This document shows positions 1 through 44,040 of a stretch of DNA of 64,000 bases, one piece after another. Below the pieces are notes generated by a model. The model did not search any database, was not told where the DNA came from, and saw nothing but the letters and a program-made list of their open reading frames with translations. The position numbers were made by a program, and so were the translations under genes. This stretch comes from Mytilus edulis (lineage: Eukaryota), in assembly GCF_963676685.1 (NCBI RefSeq), contig NC_092354.1, positions 26,908,001 through 26,972,000 on the forward strand, in the 5' to 3' direction. Position 1 is the first letter of the stretch. Every line of letters begins with the position of its first letter.

Positions 1-1500
1 ATGCCATCTACTTTCTCTGTTGTCTCCATACCATCTGCTTCCTCTGTTGTCTCCATACCATCTGACTTCCCTGTTGTTAACAAGCCACCTGCTTTCTCTG
101 TTGTCCCAAAGCCATGTACTTTCTCTGGAGTCATCATGCCATCTGCTTTCTCTGGAGTCGCCTTGCCATATACTCTCTCTATTGTCTCCATACCATCTAC
201 TCTCTCTGTTGTCAACAAGCCATCTGATTTCTCTGTTGTCTCCAGGCCATCTGCTTCCTCTGTTGTCCCAAAGCCATGTACTTTCTCTGGAGTCATCATG
301 CCATCTGCTTTCTCTGGAGTCACCATGCCATATACTCTCTCTATTGTCTCCATACCATCTACTCTCTCTTTTGTCAACAAGCCATCTGATTTCTCTGTTG
401 TCTCCAGGCCATCTGCTTCCTCTGTTGTCTCCAAGCAATCTGTTTTCTCAATTATCTCTAACCCATCTACTTTCTCTGAAGACATCATACCAACTGCTTT
501 CTCTGTTGTCATCAAGCCATCTGAATTCTCTGTTGTCTTAAAGCTATCATATATCTCTGTTGTCTCCATGCCTTCTGCTTTCGCTGTTGTCTCCATACCA
601 TCTACTTTCTCTGTTGTCTCCAAGACATCTGCCTTTTCTGTTGTCTCCATACCATCTATTTTCTCTGTTGTTTCTAAGCTATCTGCTTTCTCTGTTATCT
701 CCATGCCATCTGCTGTCTCTGTTGTCTCCAAGACATCTGCGTTCTCTGTTGTTTCCATGCCATCTGCTTTATATGTTGTCTCCATGCCATCTGCTTTCTC
801 TGGAGTCACCATGCCATATACTCTCTCTATTGTCTCCATACCATCTACTCTCTCTGTTGTCAACAAGCCATCTGATTTCTCTGTTGTCTCCAGGCCATTT
901 GCTTCCTCTGTTGTCCCAAAGCCATGTACTTTCTCTGGAGTCATCATGCCATCTGCTTTCTCTGGAGTCACCATGCCATATACTCTCTTTATTGTCTCCA
1001 TACCATCTACTCTCTCTGTTGTCAACAAGCCATCTGATCTCTCTGTTATCTCCAGGCCATCTGCTTCCTCTGTTGTCTCCAAGCCATCTGTTTTCTCAAT
1101 TATCTGTAACCCATCTACTTTCTCTGAAGACATCATACCAACTGCTTTCTCTGTTGTCATCAAGCCATCTGAATTCTCTGTTGTCTTAAAGCTATCACAT
1201 ATCTCTGTTGTCTCCATGCCTTCTGTTTTCGCTGTTGTCTCCATACCATCTACTTTCTCTGTTGTCTCCAAGACATCTGCGTTCTCTGTTGTTTCCATGC
1301 CATCTGCTTTATATGTTGTCTCCATGTCTTCTGCTTTCTCTGTTGTCTCCATGCCTTCTGCTTTCGCTGTTGTCTCCAAGACATCTGCTTTCTCTGTTTT
1401 CTCCATACCATCTACTTTCTCTGTTGTCTCTAAGCTATCTGATGTCCCTGTTGTCTCCATGCCATCGGATATCTTTGTTGTCTTCAATCCATCTGCTTTT
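1..1500 (-). repeat. Coding 27-bp minisatellite (about 55 units, consensus DGMETTEKA) with higher-order duplications
   Basis: Repeated ccatctgctttctctgttgtctccatg-type units with 162-bp and 648-bp block duplications; the frame stays open on the minus strand. Confidence 0.9.
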
Positions 1501-4500
1501 TCTATACCATTAACTGTCATATTTTCTGTACCAATATCATTTACTGCACCAACGTCTATATCCATACTATCAATGTCATATGTCATTTCTAGAATATTTC
1601 CAAATACACTGCTTATCAGATCAGAACCAAATAAATCCATTGATAAATCTGGTGTGCTTTGTTCTTCCAAAACAACTAAATCATCGTCAAATGGTTCTTT
1701 TGGTTTTTCCATTTGCAAAAGTACAACAAAGTGATTTGGCACCCATTCTGAAGGTTTATCGTCAATTCCTCCTGTGTTTGTCCACATAATATGTGCTGGA
1801 AGTAGGTCTGTATTGTATGTCTGCTTGAATGGAAAAAAGTGTCTATGAAGGTCATTTCTGATGGTTAGTCCAGCATACACTGGATACACTGAGACAACCT
1901 CTCTGAGTAACGCATTGGAAATTGCTGCTATTTGCCAAATACCCATATAAGCCGCATGATGGGCGACACTTAGAACCTCTTGCTCAAATATGGACTCAAT
2001 GTTGTGCTTTGATAAGTGTTGAACCATATAAAATGGCGAAAACATCGCATATTGCTTTGCTATATCCCTTTTTCTGGTTCCACCTCTCTCCAAATAATGG
2101 TCATCAAGGTATTTTTGCTTCTGCTGTACTAGCTCAAACACTATTCTAATTCTCATTTCCTTGAAGTGTTCTTCTGTTCCATATGCAATTAAACTTGCAC
2201 AACGTGCCAAACAATTTCCATCCCCATAAATAGTTGTTGGATAAAATCCCTTATCCATATATTCTCCTGTTACAAGTGGCAATGAACCTTTGTCTATTTC
2301 ACGCTTGTGAGACACAATATATATGTCTTGCTGGTTTGTCACTGGAGGAAGTTTCCCTACATCTCTAACAAGATCTTCAACCTGTTCATAATGAGTGCAT
2401 GAATTTAACTGTTCATACAGATCTGGGAAAACTATATAATCAACAACTAATGTTTTGCTAACACCATCCTGTATCCAAACCTTATCCAATGTTTCAACAC
2501 CATCCGGTGTCTCAACACCATCCACTGTCTCAACCTCATCCACTGTTTCAACCTCATCCACTGTCTCAACCTCATCCACTGTCTCAACACCATCTGGTGT
2601 CACCATACCAGCTGCATCAACGCCATCTGTTGTGGTATTCTGTTTTGTTTTGACTTCTTTGTTCACTGTTTGTCTTTTGTTTCTTTTCAGTCCTTTCTTA
2701 GGTTTACATTGGTCTTGTCCATTTCCAGCTTGCATTAATCTTGTCACTTTCCATTCATCCACATATGCTTTGTTGGTACAACAATTATAATTTTCAAGCA
2801 AACATTCTTCACAAAAGCAAGTCAAATTTCTGGTCTGGATCATGTTTGGATCATCTATAAGACTTTTGATACTGTGTATTTTTTGTGTTCCTGGCACTGT
2901 TTTACAATTAAAGCTTTTATCATGGTCTATTTCTGTCTTTCCTACTAAAATATAGTGTGTCTTATGGTGTTGATGAGCTTCCTTCTCATCTTTGCTATTC
3001 TTTGTAAGAAAATGAACAGCACTTTCTGCATTACTTATGACTGCTTGGTTTGATTTCACTGCTCTACTAAGCTTTGATTTCACAACTGCCACTACCTGGT
3101 CTCCAGGTCCTTTGCCATGACGACTTCCAAAGTAAGATCTATGAATTTTCACATTTGAGTTACAAATATAACTGAAGGGAATTTTGCTCTTATACTGTGA
3201 TGAACACCCATCTGTAAATTCAAACAATGTGTCACACTGAATATTTTTCTCTTTTAAATGTTCAATAGTTTTATTTTCAAACCAATTAACTGCGTGTGCA
3301 TCATGGCGAATATCTTCACTTAAAAACACAACATCTTCCTTAACTGTACTATTGCATCCATTCTCATTATACTTGTAATAACACACCACAGGGTGTACTG
3401 TTATTTGAGTATGAATCCAGTAGAGAAACTGTGGTTCATCTTGAAACTCACAAACATAGTTACGTCCAAAGTCTAGCACTGCAATCACACAGTTTACAGG
3501 TGGGTGCTGTGAAATATTCTGGAATTGACCTAATTCCCAATGGGCAATAAATAAATGTTTTTTCAGGAATAAAATCTCAGAACACAATTCATCAATTAAA
3601 GTGTTGCTGTTCGAACTTTTGAGAATGAGGCCTTTCTTTTTTTCTTTGTTGTCAGTGACGGCCCATACATAATAGTCTACCCCATATTTGTTGGTCACGT
3701 CCTTTAAATGAGTTCTCATCTTCTGTTCTCCACATATGTTGCAAAGCCCATCAATACAATCTTTCTTGTGGTACTGGTTATCCCCTTTTGGACACATAAC
3801 TATATTAACAGCACAGTATTTGTCCTTGATTTTCAGTTCCTCTGCATTTTCACAAGAACGGCCAATTAATTTATTGACCGTCTTCAACTTCAGTTCTACA
3901 TTTAAACAGTATTCACATAAACACTGCTGCAATTGTTGATCACAAAATGTTTTAACATTTTTGGGGCGCAGTGATGCAAACTTGCTTTTTCCTAACTTCA
4001 CGCTTGGATTCTTTTCCTTATAGATTTGAAATGTGTCTAACAATGATCTGTGCATTATGTGTGCTGCTTTTCCATCTTTGTTAACCAACCTTTTGTCTGG
4101 CAATGGTGTGGATATCTGTGGGTGTAGAAAAAAATCTTTAACGTCTTCAGTTATTTCCTCAGGGATTTTATCTGATCTGACTTTGTATTCATTCAGCATG
4201 TTCAGTTCTGAACATTTATTTAGGTAAGACCATTTGATGCCCAGGTGTCTGCTTACATTCTTAGCACTTTTAACTTTAGACTGTATGCATGCTGATACTA
4301 ATGCTCGACGTAAGGTTTTCTCAGATTTCTTATTACTGCTTTTTAGTCGAAATATTTGTCTTTTTATATTATTAAAGCAATAGGTTTCTACTTTTCTCTT
4401 TTTTGGTGTGGTTATTCCTACTCTTGCAAGAGCTGCATGTTTCTTGGGTGATGCATTACTTATTATATTCATGACTACTCTTGCCATTTTTTCTGCACAT

Positions 4501-7500
4501 TTTGGGAGATACTGCTTTACTCTTTGTGTTGCTTTTTCTTCAGCTGAAGGACTACTAAAAACTGAATTACCATTTGCTGGCTTTGTTCTTGTCTTTTTGT
4601 TCTGCGACATTTTTCTCATTCGGTCCTTTTCCTTAACACGTCTTTTTTTCTGGCAAGATGATCTTCTACGAGAATCTTGCTTTTTTATTCGCCAGTATTC
4701 GCGCTGTTCTAAGATTTTTTGTCTTGTCTTTGGTTTTATTCTCTTCTTTTCTATTCCAAGGGCTTTTTGTTTTTCTCTATGTCTTTTAGCTCTAATACGA
4801 TTTCCTTCTCTTATTTGTTCTATTTCTGTTTCAGTTTTTTCCTTCAGTCTATTCTCTTTGGCTTGCTCTGCATTCTTCTTTTTTATCTCCAAATAATCTA
4901 AAAAGAAAAAGAAAGAATCAAGGTCGACATACTTTTATTGTGATTTAAACATGGGTCTTAGCAATTGTGGGGGATAAAATATGCGAAAAACAAAGGCCTG
5001 TGTTTAAAATATTCAAAATTTATGGCCACAATGAATATTTCGATTATAATGTTGTTTTTTTAGAGAACATAGACTATACCGACATTTTCAACAATTTAAT
5101 GAGGTTTTCATGCACTAACTATACTGTGATGTTGTCAATTTTAGTGTAAATATTTACACAGTCATATAGACACATCTTTGAAACCAGAATGCTACAGATG
5201 ATTGGCACCAAATTTGGTAAATTTTTTACAAGTAGTTTCAGCAAAAAAGATGTTTTAACAAGAATGTGTCTATAGTACAGGGATGGCCCACTCCCACTAT
5301 CATTTCTATGTTCAGTGGGCCGTGAAATTGGGATCAAAACTCTTAATTTGGCATTTAAATTAAAAAGATCATATCACAGGGAACATGAGTACTAAGTGTC
5401 AGGTTGATTGGACTTCAACTTCATCAAAAACTACCTTGACCAAAAACTTTAACCTGACACTGGACACGGGACAGATGGACGAATGAATGCAGAGACCAGA
5501 AAACATAATGCCACTACTATTGTAGGTGGGGCATAAAAAGTTTTCAATGCGTGACAAATGCCAAATGAAGCGTTAGTTCACACAGCCCTTCTGGCCAGAT
5601 AACTTATTAGGAGTCCTTACCAGGTCTTAATTTCAGGTTTTCTCTGTATCTTTTTTGTTTCTCTGCATTGCTGAGTTTTGGTACATGCATAAATCCTTCT
5701 TCTTCAGCTGGTTTTTCTTTCCTAGGCCTCATCTCCATTCTGTAAATACCAAAATAAGCCAAATGAACTGTAATTCAAGCGTTTTCTACTATAATCAAAA
5801 TGTCACATTTCTCTTTCAATGTATGAATGTGAAACACTGTTACTTTTTACATCATTTTATGGTTAAGATGTCCATAATCACAAAGCAAAATATTTTATAT
5901 TTGTGGTTTATCATTATATATCTTTCAAATTTAACAGACTATAGGTACAAAAATGTTCTTCTGTTTTAAAAACATGTAGAATGTTTTCAATATTGCAGTC
6001 ATAACGATGCTGATATGATCAATCATCATTATGTCAAAATGTTGCGACATTTGACACCATTTTGTTTAACATTAAAGGTCAATATTCACATATATAACCT
6101 AATTTGTTAACACTTGTTTACCTTGGACTATAAATATATTTTGAGACAATAATTCTGTTTCAAGAACACAAAAAATATGTTCTTTAAAATAAAATGATGA
6201 CTGTTCTATTACAGTAATATAGTATAATACTTTGCCAAACAGTTGTTATTTGGACTCGTCTCTTCACAATTTTTTGTTTTTTAAGCAAGTCAACATCACA
6301 TATGTTACTTCATTGTCAAACAGTATTAATTGAATAATATAAACAAGATTATATTTTTTGAAGCAAAAAACAAATAGATTGGAACTCAGGATTTTAACAT
6401 ATTTAAAGCATTATTAAACTGATTTTGTTACATTTTTTGGTTTGTCGAGATATGTCAAACTGCTGTGATTTGGACATACATTATTCACGATATTTAAAAT
6501 AAAAAATGGTCAATTTTCACAACTGTTACAAAAAAATTGTAGAATGATGTTGCATAGAATAATTGCACTGTCTTTAAACGATAAAGATCATGACTTTTTT
6601 GTTTTAAAAGTATAATTATGACAAGAACATTCAAAGTCTAATGTTAAGTAAGTTTAAGTAAATTGTAAACAGGTTATGATTGACCATGATTTTTTTCCAT
6701 AAAAGTCACATGTAACATTAGTTGTACATCTTAAGGTAAACTGGTAAATAACAGTCTTTCTTATATTATCATGATAGTTATAAAGAATTTTAAACCATCC
6801 TCTTTAAATTTAAATCTTTATCAAAGACTTCAATTAAGAACTACATCTAAATTAATTTGATGTCAAAATCATGTTATACTGGACATATTTTAAGTAAGAC
6901 AAATATCTTTGATGAGTGGTCAAACATCACAGCTGTTGTTTTTTGTGTTGTAAAATTTGTTTATGCATTAAATGTACTTAAATGGTACATTGACATGTGG
7001 GTGATTTAAGATAAGAAAACAGAACTTTTGATACTTTCAGGTAAAGAGTATATTAAAAGTATTTTTGAACAGGATATGATAACACCAGTGTGCTTGACAA
7101 TGTTAACAGGTTGAATTAAGTAAACAGATGTCATGAATGACAATGTTACACCAGCCAAGATCTAATAAATTAATTTCTTATTTGTAACAGTTATTTATAA
7201 TTTTGTATACATTATCAATAATAAGCCTAAAAAAAAGAACAAAACACATTGAGCAATGTTTAATTTATTGTATCAGTCAGACACCAAACTGTTGTGATGA
7301 ATGACAGTTTTTTCAGGCAAGAACTGAAAAAAATAAAAAGTCCATAATAACATTGTTATCTTTTTATGGGAAAATGTTCACATGTACAATTCAGATCTAA
7401 TGAGGCATGTAATTTTCACCTTTATAAAACAGAAGTATGTAAACAAAACCCATTATAATGTGTTTAAAACATGTTATGATTGGTGATTGATAGAAATACA

Positions 7501-8004
7501 TTGCTTAGTAACAACTGTGTACTTGACATTTCTGTCCAGGACGTTGAAGTCAACCATCACTTAGTTATTCATGGTTAACATAAACACACATCCCTATAGA
7601 TCTATATTTCTTTTTGTTTTCAAAGTGTACATGTATCATAGTAGATTCTTTTTGCAACTTTTTCTTTATCATGACAAGCTTTCTTTTTGATGATGTGATG
7701 TACAAAAAACATAAGTGATGTTTGACTCTAATTTTAAACCAGACAATGTATGTCAATGATAACATGTGTTATCCATGTCAATACCGAAATCATGCGTATA
7801 TCTCGTGTCCCTTTCCAAACTCCCCGGGTATTTTATATAAAGTTTGCACTCTTTAAAACAAACATAGCACATTAAAAACCACATATAAACACGGGACATT
7901 TAATGGATTATTTACTTATAACGGTAACTAATGTTATCATTCTCAACGAACGTGAAAATCCTCAATTTCTAACTGAAAACTTACCTGAGGAAATTGCTTG
8001 CCAT
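1..8004 (-). CDS. Spliced Sola2-type DDD transposase fused to a vertnin-like OTU cysteine-protease domain and an acidic repeat tail; coding exons 8004-7985, 5739-5621 and 4897-<1 (3' end outside window)
   Basis: I translated the minus frame by hand and found no stop from 4897 to 1. GT-AG junctions are phase-compatible and give MASNFLR-MEMRPRKEK...LSNAEKQKRYRENLKLRP-DYLEIKKK. Transposase motifs: FASLRPKNV..QQCLCEYC, VLDFGRNY (D 3471-3473), FTDGCSSQYKSK (D 3210-3212), FGSRHGKGPGD (D 3099-3101), VPGTQKIH and CFCEEC. Protease motifs: YGDGNCLAR (C 2211-2213), YMGIWQIAAIS, VSVYP and IMWT..WVPNHFV (H 1731-1733). Confidence 0.88.
5290..5540. mobile_element. Non-autonomous Helentron-like (HINE) fragment in the transposase intron
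   Basis: GGAC/GAAT microsatellite followed by a terminal hairpin atgcca-ctac-tatt-gtag-gtggggcat and an A-run. Confidence 0.5.
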
Positions 8005-9774
8005 CTTGTATTGTAATAACCAAATCAGATACGGTATTAATCCGGTCGTTTGACTTCCGGTGGAATTGTCTAGAACAATCAACTGCAGATTAAAATTCAT
8101 TGGATAATATTGCATAAACTGCATCCAACAACCGTTACTTTTTTGACGGAATATTTTTTATTTTTTTCAGTTGTGTTTATTTTTTTAGGGTCCATTGCTC
8201 TGTACGCCATGCTATAAGAAAAACGTGTTATAACATCAGATGTTTTCAGTGATAACAAGTTTGCGTTCTTTTTATTTAACATTTTGCTTTCTGTGTGTCT
8301 TGTTGCTAACACTGTTATTTGACGGAAAATCGTAATGCTTGGGTTATCTAAATAAATCAAAGTTTTCCTAGAAAACACCACTAAAACAACTTTATGTTCA
8401 TAATTTAAATAAAATATTGATTGCACTATGCTTTAAAACCATCAACTTGAACAGAAAATAGTATCATGAACCAAAAATTTTGCTGTGAAAATTTGACACT
8501 CTGTTGATTTTTGCATTTGTCCGTGATTTTTTTCTCAAAATTAACAGTTTTAACTTCAAATCTTTTTTAATATAACTCCAATCACCATGAAATTTTAAGA
8601 ACTATCTCTTTATTCATTTAGTTTCAATTCTGATATCTAACACTTTTATTTTTATGATTATAATTTGCTCTACACAGGTTATAATGAATGTCACTGTAAG
8701 TTCCACTGTAGCGTGGAATGGCTCTTATACACAATCTCAATCATACAATTTGACAATTTTTTTCACACAATGCCTGAGTCTCCTAAAAGCGCCATTGGTG
8801 AAGAAAGATACACTTTGAGATCAAAGGTTTTTACTCGATTTTTTTTTTATGGTTAAATGTTTTGTTATCCGATCTTTAGTTTTCTGTGTCGCGATTTTGG
8901 CATGTTTGTCTTTTTGCAACATTGGTTTCCATTGTTCACCCTAAAGCACAGTCCACCCGGCCAAGGATTGACAAATTGTTTTCAGGATGTAAAATTACCC
9001 AAGCGGACCAATACATGTTAGTAAAATAGAACGTCTGGCCTGTTGATTTTAAAGTTTATCGCGAAGACTTGGAGTCTTTGAATTTTCTTGTCAATTTACT
9101 TCTGTGGAGTAATGCATAAGACATGTGTTTGCGGGGTAAAAGTACTGTGTCTTGTATGATTATGACATATTTGAAACTATTTTTTTAATTTGTTCTTTGT
9201 TTTTGAAATTTGTTTTCGGCGACATTTAAAATTCAAGGTAACATAATATTCATCAATAATATAGCTAGAACAAAATAGCTACATCACACTTTTTAACAAC
9301 TGTCTGTATAGCAGTCTGCAGACATGTAAACCTTTACTTTTTGCATTTCTGACATTCCCATAGGCTTGATAAAAGTATTAGTTTTCTAGGCCAGTTCAGA
9401 TCTACCTGATAATAGTTGTTACATGTATGGCATTCGTATACTTTATTTAGTAATAATAGTATTATCAACTGGCTATTTAATAATTACGTTTAGCAGTCTT
9501 TGTGCTTAGCCACGTATCTGACCGCCCATGGTTGTTAAAGTGCTTTTCTGGCTGTTAAATCATCTCTACAGGACAACAGAATCTAACAGATTTTTTGTTG
9601 GGAAAACTGAGCTCTATCGTCTAATAAAAGTCAGTCAATATTGACATGCATCCCTTCATGTTTTACTCTCAACAATAATTTACTATTTACCGTTGTAATC
9701 GGATATATGCTTCTTGTAGAATGCATCTTTGTCGAGGTTATTCTCGCACCAAAATTGTGCATCAGATTCTGGGC

Positions 9775-42974: not shown

Positions 42975-44040
42975 TGACAGTTCCTTTCTACTGTACAATC
43001 AAACTCACTCCCAATGTCTGCAATCCCTTCAAATGCATTTTTGTTTTTGTACTGGCCAGCGCATCTATCAGAAAACTGGATATGATGGTCAATTGTTAAA
43101 CCTCTCCTTTGGATTAAATGTTCATTTTCCTTTCTTATAAATGTGCTTACAGCATAAAAGTCATGCTTTAGGTCTCCAGATAATATTACTATGTCTGCTT
43201 TGACTGTTTCACCGCATGTTTTGCATTTGTAGTAACAAATACTTGGGAGAACGATCACTTGTTCTGCAGACCAATGAGCTGATTGGCCATCATCCTGATA
43301 GAAACATGTATAATTCTGTCCAAAATCAAGAACCATAACAACCGTTCGAGGTTGTAAATTTGATGTTATATGGCTAAATTGTCTCTGCTGCCATGTTGCA
43401 ACAAAGAGGTGTATTGAGAGTTCTGTCAATTCTTTCTTCAACTCTGCAATCAATTCAAATCCACTTCCAGTTAAACATTTCAGTCCTTTCTTACTTGTTA
43501 TCTAGTGCCATCCTTTCTTGTTATAGTATCCCATTTGTACCAGGTCAATGTACATTTTTTCATCACACACCTGATTTACCAATTCATTTAACATGCTTAC
43601 ACCGCAGCTAGAGCAATCCCTGTAGATGCATTCCCTCTTATGGAACAAGGCACCATTAGGTTTGGGACATAATGTCTTATTAACTGTATTATACTTATTT
43701 TCTGGAAAACTTTTTATTTTATACTTCAGAGTTTTTATTTTCAAAGAAATATTGGCACAGTATTCACAGATACATTGTTGTAAAGGTGTATTACTGAATG
43801 TCTTTAAATTTGGTGGTTTTAAGGAGCAGAACGTACTTGTTAAATCCAATATGAGTATCTTGGTTCTGCTCTAAAAAATCAGTATGTGTTTGTTTTAAAG
43901 TCTTTTCTAATGTATACACATTTTTTCCTTTGATTACTTTGCTAATATCAGGTAATACTGTTGATGCCTACGGTCTCATATAAAAATCTTTGACCTTTTT
44001 CAAAACAGTCTCCTCAATTGCATCTTTTCTTGTAATCCAC
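42975..44040 (-). pseudogene. Degenerate second Sola2-type transposase
   Basis: FCSLKPPNLK..QQCICEYC, CPKP..HKREC..CSSCG, HLFVATWQ, VLDFGQNY and FSDRCAGQYKNK, collinear with the 4897-1 transposase; frameshifted and truncated before the third Asp. Confidence 0.85.

What the first reader, a model, noticed from the sequence alone, without database searches (positions are those of the whole stretch)
1..8004. Hidden intact Sola2 transposase fused to a vertnin-like OTU protease domain
Seen: one uninterrupted 4.9-kb exon plus two phase-compatible upstream exons encode at least 1678 aa. The ORF track omits it because the stop lies outside the window. All three candidate catalytic Asp are present, followed in the same frame by GDGNC (Cys 2211-2213) and WVPNHF (His 1731-1733). 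Established: these motifs match Sola2 DDD transposases and the OTU-like domain of vertnin (VRTN). Inference: a potentially active DNA transposon carrying its own deubiquitinase-type protease, which could process the polyprotein or counter ubiquitin-based silencing. It may also show a mobile relative of the vertebrate vertnin domain. I cannot tell whether this architecture is already catalogued.
Basis: partly seen in the sequence, partly recalled or inferred. Interest (0 to 1): 0.82.

Follow-up and report, generated by a model that had tools for sequence, protein, structure and literature searches.

The report
Mussel Sola2 transposon with OTU protease
This is an intact, recently mobile 11-kb "cut-and-paste" DNA transposon of the blue mussel whose single large protein joins a Sola2-type transposase to a deubiquitinase-type (OTU) protease; the combination is widespread in marine invertebrates, but I found no published description of it.

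Summary
The minus strand carries an unbroken frame of 1644 codons (window 4934->3). It continues 249 bases past the window start, and two phase-compatible upstream exons precede it.

The gene lies in an 11,114-bp element with 21-bp imperfect inverted ends (GAG...CTC) and 4-bp AT-rich target duplications. The genome holds seven copies: three intact, one decayed and three internally deleted. The intact copies differ with dN/dS 0.15-0.25.

The catalytic core folds as an RNase H-like integrase/transposase with three invariant Asp. Its motifs and D-D spacing match a published Sola2 transposase. The downstream domain folds as an OTU deubiquitinase (Z up to 13.9) with invariant DGNC and NHF motifs.

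47 of 131 relatives (molluscs, a priapulid) carry the same fusion, so it is old and under selection. OTU fusions are already described for Ginger1 transposases and Helitron proteins. I found no paper describing one on Sola2.

The vertnin link rests only on automatic protein names. Four RNA-seq runs gave almost no coverage and no splice junctions. Protease function is inferred, not shown.

Verdict: a new variant of a known kind, of moderate interest.

The parts
8725..8728 (-). 5' target-site duplication (ATAA on the element strand). The 3' copy (ATAT, one mismatch) lies outside the window at C11:26905607-26905610.
   Evidence: The five other copies with both ends intact have perfect 4-bp TSDs: ATAA, ATAT, ATAT, CTAT, ATAT.
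8704..8724 (-). 5' terminal inverted repeat, GAGCCATTCCACGCTACAGTG. Its 3' partner (reverse complement GAGACATTCCACAGTACAGTG) ends at window -2389 = C11:26905611.
   Evidence: Borders of homology among copies on four chromosomes. The 5' and 3' ends are each found 7 times in the genome.
7985..8004 (-). Candidate exon A: ATG + 6 codons, donor AG|gtaagt.
   Evidence: It is phase-compatible with exon B. By eye, 'NFLR' resembles 'SFLR' near the N-terminus of scallop P0001. No RNA support.
5740..7984 (-). Intron 1 (model).
   Evidence: gtaagt...ttacag.
5621..5739 (-). Exon B, with an in-frame ATG at 5738.
   Evidence: BLASTP to P0001 residues 24-41: 83% identity, E 3e-07.
4898..5620 (-). Intron 2 (model). 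It carries a nested interspersed repeat at about 5300-5520.
   Evidence: gtaagg...ttttag. RNA reads pile up only on 5155-5548, at 90-95% likeness and mostly partial.
1..4897 (-). Exon C: one open frame that runs on to a stop at window -249.
2961..3539 (-). RNase H-like DDD catalytic core. D at 3471-3473 (LDFGRNY), 3210-3212 (TDGCSSQYK) and 3099-3101 (HGKGPGD).
   Evidence: The three Asp are invariant or nearly so in 38 homologues. The model has pLDDT 84.2. VIA-wide Z 10.4 to the RSV integrase core, and also IstA, Mos1 and Hermes.
2778..3743 (-). Conserved Cys pairs flanking the core: CxxC at 3732-3743, and C-x-C...C at 2778-2819.
   Evidence: Nearly invariant C85, C88, C393, C395, C406.
2460..2594 (-). 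Short 18/54-bp coding repeat (VETVDE) in the linker. Its copy number differs in the C6 copy.
1698..2369 (-). OTU-fold cysteine protease domain. Cys 2211-2213 is in DGNC and His 1731-1733 is in NHF.
   Evidence: The model has pLDDT 83.9. Foldseek gave 45 PDB matches at E<=0.001; every listed row is an OTU protease. VIA Z 13.9/13.2/13.1 to VCPIP1/TRABID/OTUD3. D93-G-N-C96-L and H256-F-V are invariant in 20 sequences.
1..1503 (-). Acidic, Thr-rich tail made of 27-bp (9-aa, DGMETTEKA-like) tandem repeats. There are 55.7 units inside the window. The array ends about 240 bases before the window start.

Best explanation
What it is: an autonomous cut-and-paste DNA transposon of the Sola2 superfamily in a Mytilus (blue mussel) genome. 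It is 11,114 bp long, on the minus strand, from window 8724 to 2,389 bases before the window start.

The gene: its only gene has three exons and encodes a protein of about 1,755 aa. In order, the protein has:
- a basic N-terminal region;
- Cys-rich regions around an RNase H-fold core with a DDD triad;
- a linker;
- an OTU-fold cysteine protease with intact Cys and His;
- an acidic tail of about 580 aa made of nine-residue repeats.

Shown here:
- The element has 21-bp imperfect inverted ends (GAG...CTC).
- It inserts at ATAW-like sites and makes 4-bp duplications.
- It exists in seven copies at 97-100% identity at their ends. Three of them are internally deleted non-autonomous derivatives.
- The three intact genes differ mostly at synonymous sites.

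Inferred:
- The family was mobile very recently and may still be.
- The OTU domain is an active deubiquitinase-type protease working in cis. It would strip ubiquitin or a ubiquitin-like modifier from the transposase itself, or from chromatin and repair factors at the cut site. This would stabilise the transposase or steer repair.
- Because the fusion is kept in many divergent lineages, the protease probably benefits the element.
For: Transposon status:
- The borders of homology are identical on four chromosomes.
- The 5' and 3' ends are each found 7 times.
- Perfect 4-bp TSDs flank 5 of the 6 copies with both ends intact. One of them is a non-AT-only CTAT, which fixes the exact ends.
- There is one gene only.
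- dN/dS is 0.15-0.25 over 3,390 nt among the three intact copies.

Sola2 type:
- The DDD residues are invariant or nearly so in 38 homologues. They lie at the end of beta-1, just after beta-4 and at the start of a helix in a confident model.
- The best structural matches of that model are integrase and transposase cores, Z 10.4-8.
- The motifs LDFGRN / TDG..QYKS / HGKG..D mirror MDFKEN / SDGAKHFKS / HGKSDVD of the published Sola2_DFa-2 transposase. The first D-D spacing is the same, 87 aa (counted by eye).
- Sola2 elements are described with 4-bp AT-rich TSDs, and some with 21-bp imperfect TIRs (PMC3627910).

OTU domain:
- Fold matches reach Z 13.9-12 and are all OTU deubiquitinases.
- DGNC and NHF are invariant.
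- 29 of 30 Atlas neighbours are OTU clusters.
- The aligned ranges to DUBA put C96 and H256 on its Cys224 and His334. This is arithmetic using catalytic residue numbers from my own memory.
- The complex test with mussel ubiquitin gave weak support: score 0.56, best of 3 controls 0.00. That mark was reached by 51 of 78 solved complexes and 2 of 108 mismatched pairs. At 0.60 or under it was reached by only 5 of those 78 solved complexes, and all 4 mismatches that passed scored there. The three runs agree in at least 90% of contacts and the partner's pLDDT is at least 85. The pass may come from memory of solved OTU-ubiquitin complexes.

The fusion is real:
- The same order of domains occurs in 47 of 131 relatives, including NCBI gene models from scallops, clams, a limpet, a periwinkle and Priapulus.
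- It also occurs in many long open frames of this genome at 33-40% identity.
Against: - Four RNA-seq runs of a species that holds the element gave depth of about 0-0.4 on the exons and no read across either junction. Only 6-18% of each run was read.
- Pfam's OTU model scores 15.4 bits against a cut-off of 23.3. The whole protein hits no Pfam family.
- The acidic residue found two places after the catalytic His in some OTUs is an invariant Val here.
- No enzymatic activity, substrate or transposition event has been observed.
- No formal profile match to a Repbase or Yuan-Wessler Sola2 model could be run.
- The C11 copy's two TSD copies differ at one base (ATAA/ATAT).
Confidence: 0.8

Rival explanations
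1. The same transposon, but the OTU domain is a self-processing protease. It would cut the long protein, for example to release the transposase from the acidic repeat tail or from the OTU itself, rather than act as a deubiquitinase.
For: - The OTU lies between the transposase and a long disordered tail.
- From my own knowledge, some viral OTU-type papain-like proteases both process polyproteins and remove ubiquitin.
- The ubiquitin-complex test gave only weak support.
Against: - Many relatives keep the OTU but have no tail at all: the tail is 0-50 aa in about half of them. So tail removal cannot be the conserved role.
- No conserved Gly-Gly-like cleavage motif was looked for or seen.
- The closest structural matches are cellular deubiquitinases: VCPIP1, TRABID, OTUD3, A20.
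Confidence: 0.15
2. The family is intact in sequence but no longer mobile. It would be a recently extinct or fully silenced Sola2 family, whose open frames survive only because too little time has passed.
For: - Coverage is near zero in four RNA-seq runs.
- There are only seven copies.
- One copy is decayed by stops and insertions.
- The C11 TSD has one mismatch.
Against: - The three intact genes have no stop or frameshift over about 5.2 kb. With dS of 0.02-0.04 between copies, dN/dS of 0.15-0.25 shows that selection acted during their divergence.
- Deletion derivatives have ends that are 98-99% identical.
- Transposases are often expressed only in the germline or in embryos, and the tissues of the runs read here are not known.
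Confidence: 0.3
3. It is a domesticated, vertnin-like host gene and not a transposon.
For: - Relatives are named 'Vertnin' or 'VRTN-like protein' by annotation pipelines.
- The gene has introns and evolves under purifying selection.
Against: - Seven copies lie on seven chromosomes, all bounded by the same inverted ends and by 4-bp duplications. Three are internally deleted derivatives.
- All catalytic Asp residues are intact.
Confidence: 0.02

Closest known systems
Sola2 DNA transposons (Sola superfamily of Bao, Jurka & Kapitonov 2009, as described in PMC3627910; also reported in bivalves, PMC10294476)
   Same: - A DDD transposase with the same motif set and the same 87-aa first spacing as Sola2_DFa-2.
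- 4-bp AT-rich TSDs and short imperfect TIRs of about 21 bp.
- The elements are large (10-15 kb in the dictyostelid examples) and their genes have introns.
- Bivalves are known hosts: 14 curated Sola2 families.
   Different: - The described Sola2 transposases that I could read about have no protease domain. The dictyostelid ones carry a separate Fanzor gene instead.
- Here an OTU protease and, in this family, a long acidic repeat tail are fused to the C-terminus of the transposase.
Ginger1 transposases with a C-terminal OTU or Ulp1 protease (PMC2836005); Helitron proteins with OTU; Mutator elements with Ulp1
   Same: - A ubiquitin/SUMO-type cysteine protease is fused behind the transposase in one protein.
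- The hosts are marine invertebrates (Hydra, Aplysia).
- The same hypothesis applies: the ubiquitin pathway is involved in transposition.
   Different: - The catalytic module is a Gypsy-integrase-like DDE in Ginger1 and Rep/helicase in Helitrons, not a Sola2 DDD.
- Ginger1 elements are smaller (2.6-7 kb).
- The OTU of those elements is recognised by Pfam. The one here scores below the cut-off.
Vertnin (VRTN), a vertebrate nuclear protein with an inactive OTU-like domain (PMC10318531; PMC3024977)
   Same: - Annotation pipelines name several relatives of this protein 'Vertnin' or 'VRTN-like', so some sequence similarity to vertnin exists.
- Vertnin was noted to contain a transposase-type helix-turn-helix motif.
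   Different: - Vertnin is a single-copy host gene and is listed as lacking catalytic residues.
- This protein keeps Cys/His and all three Asp, and sits in a mobile element.
- No direct alignment to a vertebrate vertnin could be made here.
Cellular OTU deubiquitinases (VCPIP1, TRABID, OTUD3, A20, DUBA/OTUD5)
   Same: - The fold matches at Z 12-13.9, covering nearly all of small OTU domains: 137 of 141 residues of OTUD3.
- The DGNC Cys motif and the His motif are present.
   Different: - Sequence identity is only 12-18%.
- The His is followed by Phe-Val, not by an acidic or Asn residue two places on.
- The domain is embedded in a transposase.

Membership tests
Sola2 transposons | RNase H-like catalytic core with a DDD triad | tested here: met
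   D175 and D262 are invariant and D299 is in at least 90% of 38 sequences. The model has pLDDT 84.2, with the three Asp after beta-1, after beta-4 and at a helix start. Best matches are integrase/transposase cores at Z 10.4-8.
Sola2 transposons | Sola2-specific motifs and spacing, compared with a published Sola2 transposase | tested here: met
   By eye against Sola2_DFa-2 and Sola2_PPa-1 (PMC3627910 additional file 3): an upstream CxxC, [LM]DFxxN, [ST]DGxxx[FY]KS and HGK[GS]xxD.
Sola2 transposons | 4-bp AT-rich target-site duplication and short TIRs | tested here: met
   TSDs are ATAA, ATAT, ATAT, CTAT and ATAT (perfect) and ATAA/ATAT. The TIRs are 21 bp with 3 mismatches.
Sola2 transposons | Significant match to a curated Sola2 profile (Repbase, Dfam, or the Yuan & Wessler alignments) | not testable with these tools
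   No such library is on hand. Pfam has no Sola2 model and gave no hit.
OTU cysteine proteases | OTU fold | tested here: met
   Foldseek gave 45 matches at E<=0.001; every listed row is an OTU protease. VIA found 110 chains at Z>=8, with a top Z of 13.9.
OTU cysteine proteases | Catalytic Cys in a DGNC-type motif and catalytic His | tested here: met
   D93-G94-N95-C96-L97 and H256-F257-V258 are invariant in 20 sequences. Coordinates were checked.
OTU cysteine proteases | Third catalytic residue | tested here: inconclusive
   The position two after the His is an invariant Val. An invariant Asp at Cys-3 and a near-invariant Asn at His-1 could serve instead.
OTU cysteine proteases | Pfam PF02338 score at or above the curated cut-off | tested here: not met
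   15.4 bits against 23.3, E 0.027, on the domain alone. There was no hit on the whole protein. A few relatives do carry a precomputed PF02338 hit: P0002, P0036, P0103.
OTU cysteine proteases | Binds and cleaves ubiquitin or a ubiquitin-like protein | not testable with these tools
   Only a prediction is available: complex score 0.56 against a best control of 0.00, rated 'weak support' by the tool, and possibly from memory of solved OTU-ubiquitin complexes.
Vertnin (VRTN) family | Detectable homology to vertebrate vertnin | not tested
   Only source names point that way: 'Vertnin' (P0033, P0042) and 'VRTN-like protein' (P0012, P0015, P0020). Three word-index searches returned no vertebrate vertnin.
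Vertnin (VRTN) family | Single-copy host gene with an inactive OTU | tested here: not met
   There are seven TIR-bounded copies and the Cys/His are intact. Vertnin is listed as lacking catalytic sites (PMC10318531).
Transposase-OTU fusions of Ginger1 type | Gypsy-integrase-like DDE transposase with YPYY, H2C2 and GPY/F motifs | tested here: not met
   No rve or integrase Pfam hit. The motif set is that of Sola2. Only the C-terminal position of the OTU is shared.

The most novel reading that the evidence does not exclude
The OTU-bearing Sola2 lineage could be the mobile source from which vertebrate vertnin (VRTN) was domesticated. VRTN is a developmental regulator of vertebral number with a dead OTU domain and a transposase-like helix-turn-helix. 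If so, this mussel element would be a living, catalytically intact relative of the vertnin ancestor. The transposase-deubiquitinase fusion would also be an old adaptive module of Sola2 elements across bilaterians, with repeated loss.
Probability: 0.25. Interest if true: 0.75.

Novelty: new variant of a known kind. Interest (0 to 1): 0.45.

Why it matters
- It adds Sola2 to the transposon superfamilies that have independently tied a ubiquitin-type protease to their transposase. Ginger1, Helitron and Mutator were known before. This strengthens the case that interfering with ubiquitin signalling is a general strategy of eukaryotic DNA transposons.
- The element is a clean specimen: exact ends, target duplications, three intact genes and natural deletion derivatives. 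The role of the protease could therefore be tested directly, by comparing wild type with a Cys-to-Ala mutant in a transposition assay.
- It gives a concrete candidate for the origin of the vertnin OTU domain.
- It explains why mollusc gene sets contain many large 'VRTN-like' or uncharacterised proteins that are in fact transposases.

Tried and rejected
- Pfam on the whole 1644-aa frame gave only chance-level hits.
- phmmer against PDB sequences gave one weak OTUD1 hit at E 0.69.
- The ESM Atlas on residues 250-1115 scored under 0.8 and is uninformative. The DUF7869 clusters it listed are a lead only.
- Foldseek on the transposase model gave nothing at E<=0.001, only weak RNase H-like rows. The wide VIA search was needed.
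- RNA-seq: four raw-read runs laid on window 2200-8100 showed no exon coverage worth the name and no joints at 7985/5739 or 5621/4897. This says nothing firm about expression.
- Rfam found nothing in 1-9000.
- Literature: no paper holds both 'Sola2' and OTU in a relevant sense, or both 'Sola2' and 'cysteine protease'. None links VRTN, vertnin or C14orf115 to Sola2. The original Sola paper (Bao et al. 2009) is not held.
- Vertebrate vertnin could not be reached by the word-index search with the whole region, the OTU part or a 38-sequence profile.
- It lists only the best 150 hits, which transposon copies would probably fill, and the operators asked for restraint.
- The domesticated-host-gene reading was considered and rejected on the TIR, TSD and copy evidence.
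- The spliced (joined) protein was never built or searched. The exons were handled one by one by reference.
- A tree of 108 transposase cores shows OTU-bearing proteins in several clades on both sides of the midpoint root. Most OTU-less rows had to be scored 'unknown', because they may be truncated, and the tree has no outgroup. So single gain with losses cannot be told from several gains.

Full report
**Observation.** On the minus strand, one frame is open from window 4934 down to 3: 1644 codons with no stop. The ORF list omits it because it runs off the window. In the genome the window is C11:26908001-26972000 of a 1.37-Gb assembly. A 279-aa Mytilus edulis protein is 100% identical to part of the frame, so the organism is Mytilus. 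The frame continues to a stop that ends 249 bases before the window start.

- exon A, 8004->7985: ATG...CTCAG|gtaagt;
- exon B, 5739->5621: ttacag|A ATG GAG...CCTG|gtaagg;
- exon C, from 4897: ttttag|AT TAT TTG.

The last 18 residues of exon B align at 83% identity (E 3e-07) to residues 24-41 of an NCBI gene model from the scallop Argopecten irradians (P0001). That protein then continues '...LRP|DYEKRK', just as exon C continues 'DYLEIKK'. So junction B/C is supported by homology. Junction A/B rests only on the splice signals and a four-residue resemblance.

**It is a transposon with defined ends.**
- A six-frame search of the genome found two further intact copies at 98% protein identity (C14, C6) and a decayed one (C12).
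- Aligning 20-kb stretches around the four loci shows that homology starts and stops at the same bases in all of them.
- The element is 11,114 bp, from window 8724 to -2389.
- It begins GAGCCATTCCACGCTACAGTG and ends CACTGTACTGTGGAATGTCTC. This is a 21-bp inverted repeat with three mismatches.
- Searching the genome with the terminal 500 bp of each end gives seven 5' ends and seven 3' ends, at 97-100% identity.
- Three of these pairs lie only 4.1, 5.7 and 6.1 kb apart (C3, C13, C8). They are internally deleted, non-autonomous derivatives.
- The flanking 4 bp are duplicated perfectly in five copies: ATAA, ATAT, ATAT, CTAT, ATAT. The window's own copy has one mismatch, ATAA/ATAT. The CTAT case fixes the ends to the base.
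- Three insertions share TGT just upstream, which hints at a TGT-ATAW target preference.
- The element holds no second gene.
- Over the 3,390 nt of exon C that precede the repeat tail, the three intact copies differ at 26-40 sites, with dN/dS 0.15-0.25. Selection for a working protein therefore acted while these copies diverged.

**The transposase is of Sola2 type.** Pfam has no model for it. In an alignment of 38 relatives, D175 (LDFGRNY) and D262 (TDGCSSQYK) are invariant, as are H293, G294 and K295 of the HGK motif. D299 (HGKGPGD) is nearly invariant. Conserved Cys pairs lie on either side.

An AlphaFold model of this part is confident: pLDDT 84.2, pTM 0.80. It places the three Asp at the end of the first core strand, just after the fourth strand, and at the start of the following helix. 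Foldseek found only weak RNase H-like rows. An exhaustive structural comparison gives retroviral integrase cores (Z 10.4, 152 residues, rmsd 3.4), then IstA, Mos1, Metnase, TnsB, Hermes and Sleeping Beauty. Every one of the 50 listed rows is an RNase H-like nuclease.

For the superfamily, I compared by eye with two published Sola2 transposases from dictyostelids (PMC3627910, additional file 3). These have an upstream CxxC, then MDFKEN, SDGAKHFKS and HGKSDVD, which is the same motif set. The first D-D spacing is 87 aa in both. The second is 43 aa there against 37 aa here. The same paper describes Sola2 elements as having 4-bp AT-rich TSDs (AWWT, ATAT, AAAT, ATTT), and one dictyostelid group as having imperfect 21-bp TIRs, as here. 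Sola2 is already known in bivalves. A formal test against a curated Sola2 profile was not possible.

**The downstream domain is an OTU protease.** Sequence evidence alone is weak: PF02338 gives E 0.027, below its cut-off, and OTUD1 gives E 0.69. A model built with 20 relatives is confident (pLDDT 83.9, pTM 0.80).
- Foldseek finds 45 PDB chains at E<=0.001, and every listed row is an OTU protease.
- A second alignment gives Z 13.9 (VCPIP1), 13.2 (TRABID), 13.1 (OTUD3, 137 of 141 residues, rmsd 2.9), and 13-12 for A20 and DUBA. 110 chains score Z>=8.
- D93-G-N-C96-L and H256-F-V are invariant in the alignment.
- The aligned ranges to DUBA (model 70-263 on chain 198-341) put C96 and H256 on its Cys224 and His334, if the ends are ungapped. 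This uses residue numbers I recall, so it is an inference.
- The residue two after the His is Val, not the acid seen in some OTUs. An invariant Asp at Cys-3 may take that role.
- A complex prediction with the mussel's own ubiquitin scored 0.56, against 0.00 for the best of three controls. The tool rates this 'weak support'. The mark was reached by 51 of 78 solved complexes and 2 of 108 mismatched pairs. At 0.60 or under it was reached by only 5 of those solved complexes, and all 4 mismatches that passed scored there. The runs agree in at least 90% of contacts and the partner's pLDDT is at least 85. The pass may reflect memory of solved OTU-ubiquitin complexes.

**The fusion is old and widespread, not a local accident.**
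- Of 131 relatives retrieved, 47 carry the OTU behind the transposase core. These include gene models from Argopecten, Pecten, Mytilus galloprovincialis, Mya, Mercenaria, Dreissena, Patella, Littorina and the priapulid Priapulus caudatus.
- Relatives from fishes, hagfishes, echinoderms and a hemichordate show no OTU at this sensitivity.
- In this genome, at least 20 further long open frames at 33-40% identity have the same order of domains. Other Sola2 families (902-aa frames, about 27% identity) lack the OTU.
- On a tree of 108 transposase cores, OTU-bearing proteins fall in several clades on both sides of the midpoint root. Without an outgroup, and with many possibly truncated rows, I cannot separate one early gain with losses from several gains.
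- About ten of the 39 OTU-bearing relatives checked end in acidic tandem-repeat tails whose units are unrelated: periods of 8, 12, 14, 15, 24, 42, 44 and 47 aa, and 9 aa here. About half have no tail. The tail is thus a recurrent but optional feature.

**Expression.** Four raw-read RNA-seq runs of a species label that holds the element were laid on window 2200-8100. Exon depth was 0-0.4, and no read joined 7985/5739 or 5621/4897. Only 6-18% of each run was read, and I do not know the tissues. The only strong signal comes from an interspersed repeat inside intron 2 (about 5300-5520), from reads of other copies. So the gene model lacks RNA support here, and activity today is not shown.

**Comparison with what is known.** Cysteine proteases of the ubiquitin/SUMO type fused to or carried by DNA transposons are established. 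Ginger1 transposases end in OTU or Ulp1, animal Helitrons carry OTU, and Mutator elements carry Ulp1. The authors proposed that the ubiquitin pathway takes part in transposition or in the repair that follows (PMC2836005). I did not test that note.

For Sola2, I found no paper that mentions an OTU or cysteine protease domain. Repbase could not be consulted. On vertnin, one paper lists it as an inactive OTU homologue lacking catalytic sites (PMC10318531). Another notes a transposase-type helix-turn-helix (PMC3024977). None that I could search links it to Sola2. The only bridge is that pipelines named several relatives 'Vertnin' or 'VRTN-like'. No vertebrate vertnin was retrievable for a direct test.

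**Mechanism.** Shown: an autonomous Sola2 element with exact ends, 4-bp duplications, recent copies and a selected, single, fused gene. Inferred, at about even odds within the overall reading: the OTU is an active deubiquitinase working in cis. It would protect the transposase from ubiquitin-dependent turnover, or edit ubiquitin marks on chromatin or repair proteins at the break. A self-processing role is less likely, because many relatives keep the OTU without any tail to remove.

**Verdict.** It is unproven on vertnin and on function. This is a new variant of a known kind (a transposase plus a ubiquitin-type protease, now on Sola2). It is a good specimen for experiments and of moderate interest.

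Noticed in passing
window 5155-5548 (inside intron 2, minus-strand gene): An interspersed repeat is covered at depths up to about 1,000 in all four RNA-seq runs. The reads are mostly 90-95% alike and only partly fit. Many joints 'go back' about 155 bases, which suggests tandem or dimeric copies elsewhere. It is present in all full-length copies of the element, so it was nested before they spread. No Rfam family matches.
   Followed up: partly
window 43016-43840, minus strand (C11:26951016-26951840): A fragment of a different Sola2-type transposase: 40% identity to residues 316-592 of the query, with one TAG inside.
   Followed up: no
window 1-1503 and relatives P0001, P0009, P0012, P0017, P0019, P0041, P0042, P0047: Acidic tandem-repeat tails with unrelated repeat units (periods of 8 to 47 aa) recur behind the OTU in different lineages. 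The array length also differs between the copies of this family: about 1.2 to 1.8 kb.
   Followed up: partly
G000 C13:11895630-11901297, C8:68377712-68383778, C3:23107752-23111889: Three internally deleted copies (5.7, 6.1 and 4.1 kb) have ends 98-99% identical to the full element and perfect 4-bp TSDs. They are natural non-autonomous derivatives.
   Followed up: partly
flanks of the C11, C14 and C6 copies: Three independent insertions share TGT just upstream of the duplicated ATAW. The C6 site reads as the palindrome TGT-ATAT-ACA. This suggests a target preference wider than the 4-bp duplication.
   Followed up: no
proteins P0040 and P0058: Two relatives of this animal transposase are filed under bacterial metagenome-assembled genomes (Candidatus Thiodiazotropha endolucinida, Sedimenticola sp.). 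Both names read as sulfur-oxidising symbiont lineages, so this is probably host DNA binned with the bacteria.
   Followed up: no
G000, e.g. C2:84450797-84454090, C10:56454745-56458038, C7:81318811-81322104, C13:21927116-21930001: Several other Sola2-OTU families (33-40% identity to this one) have multiple copies with uninterrupted frames of 1,100-1,800 aa. There are also OTU-less Sola2 families with 902-aa frames in at least 8 loci.
   Followed up: no
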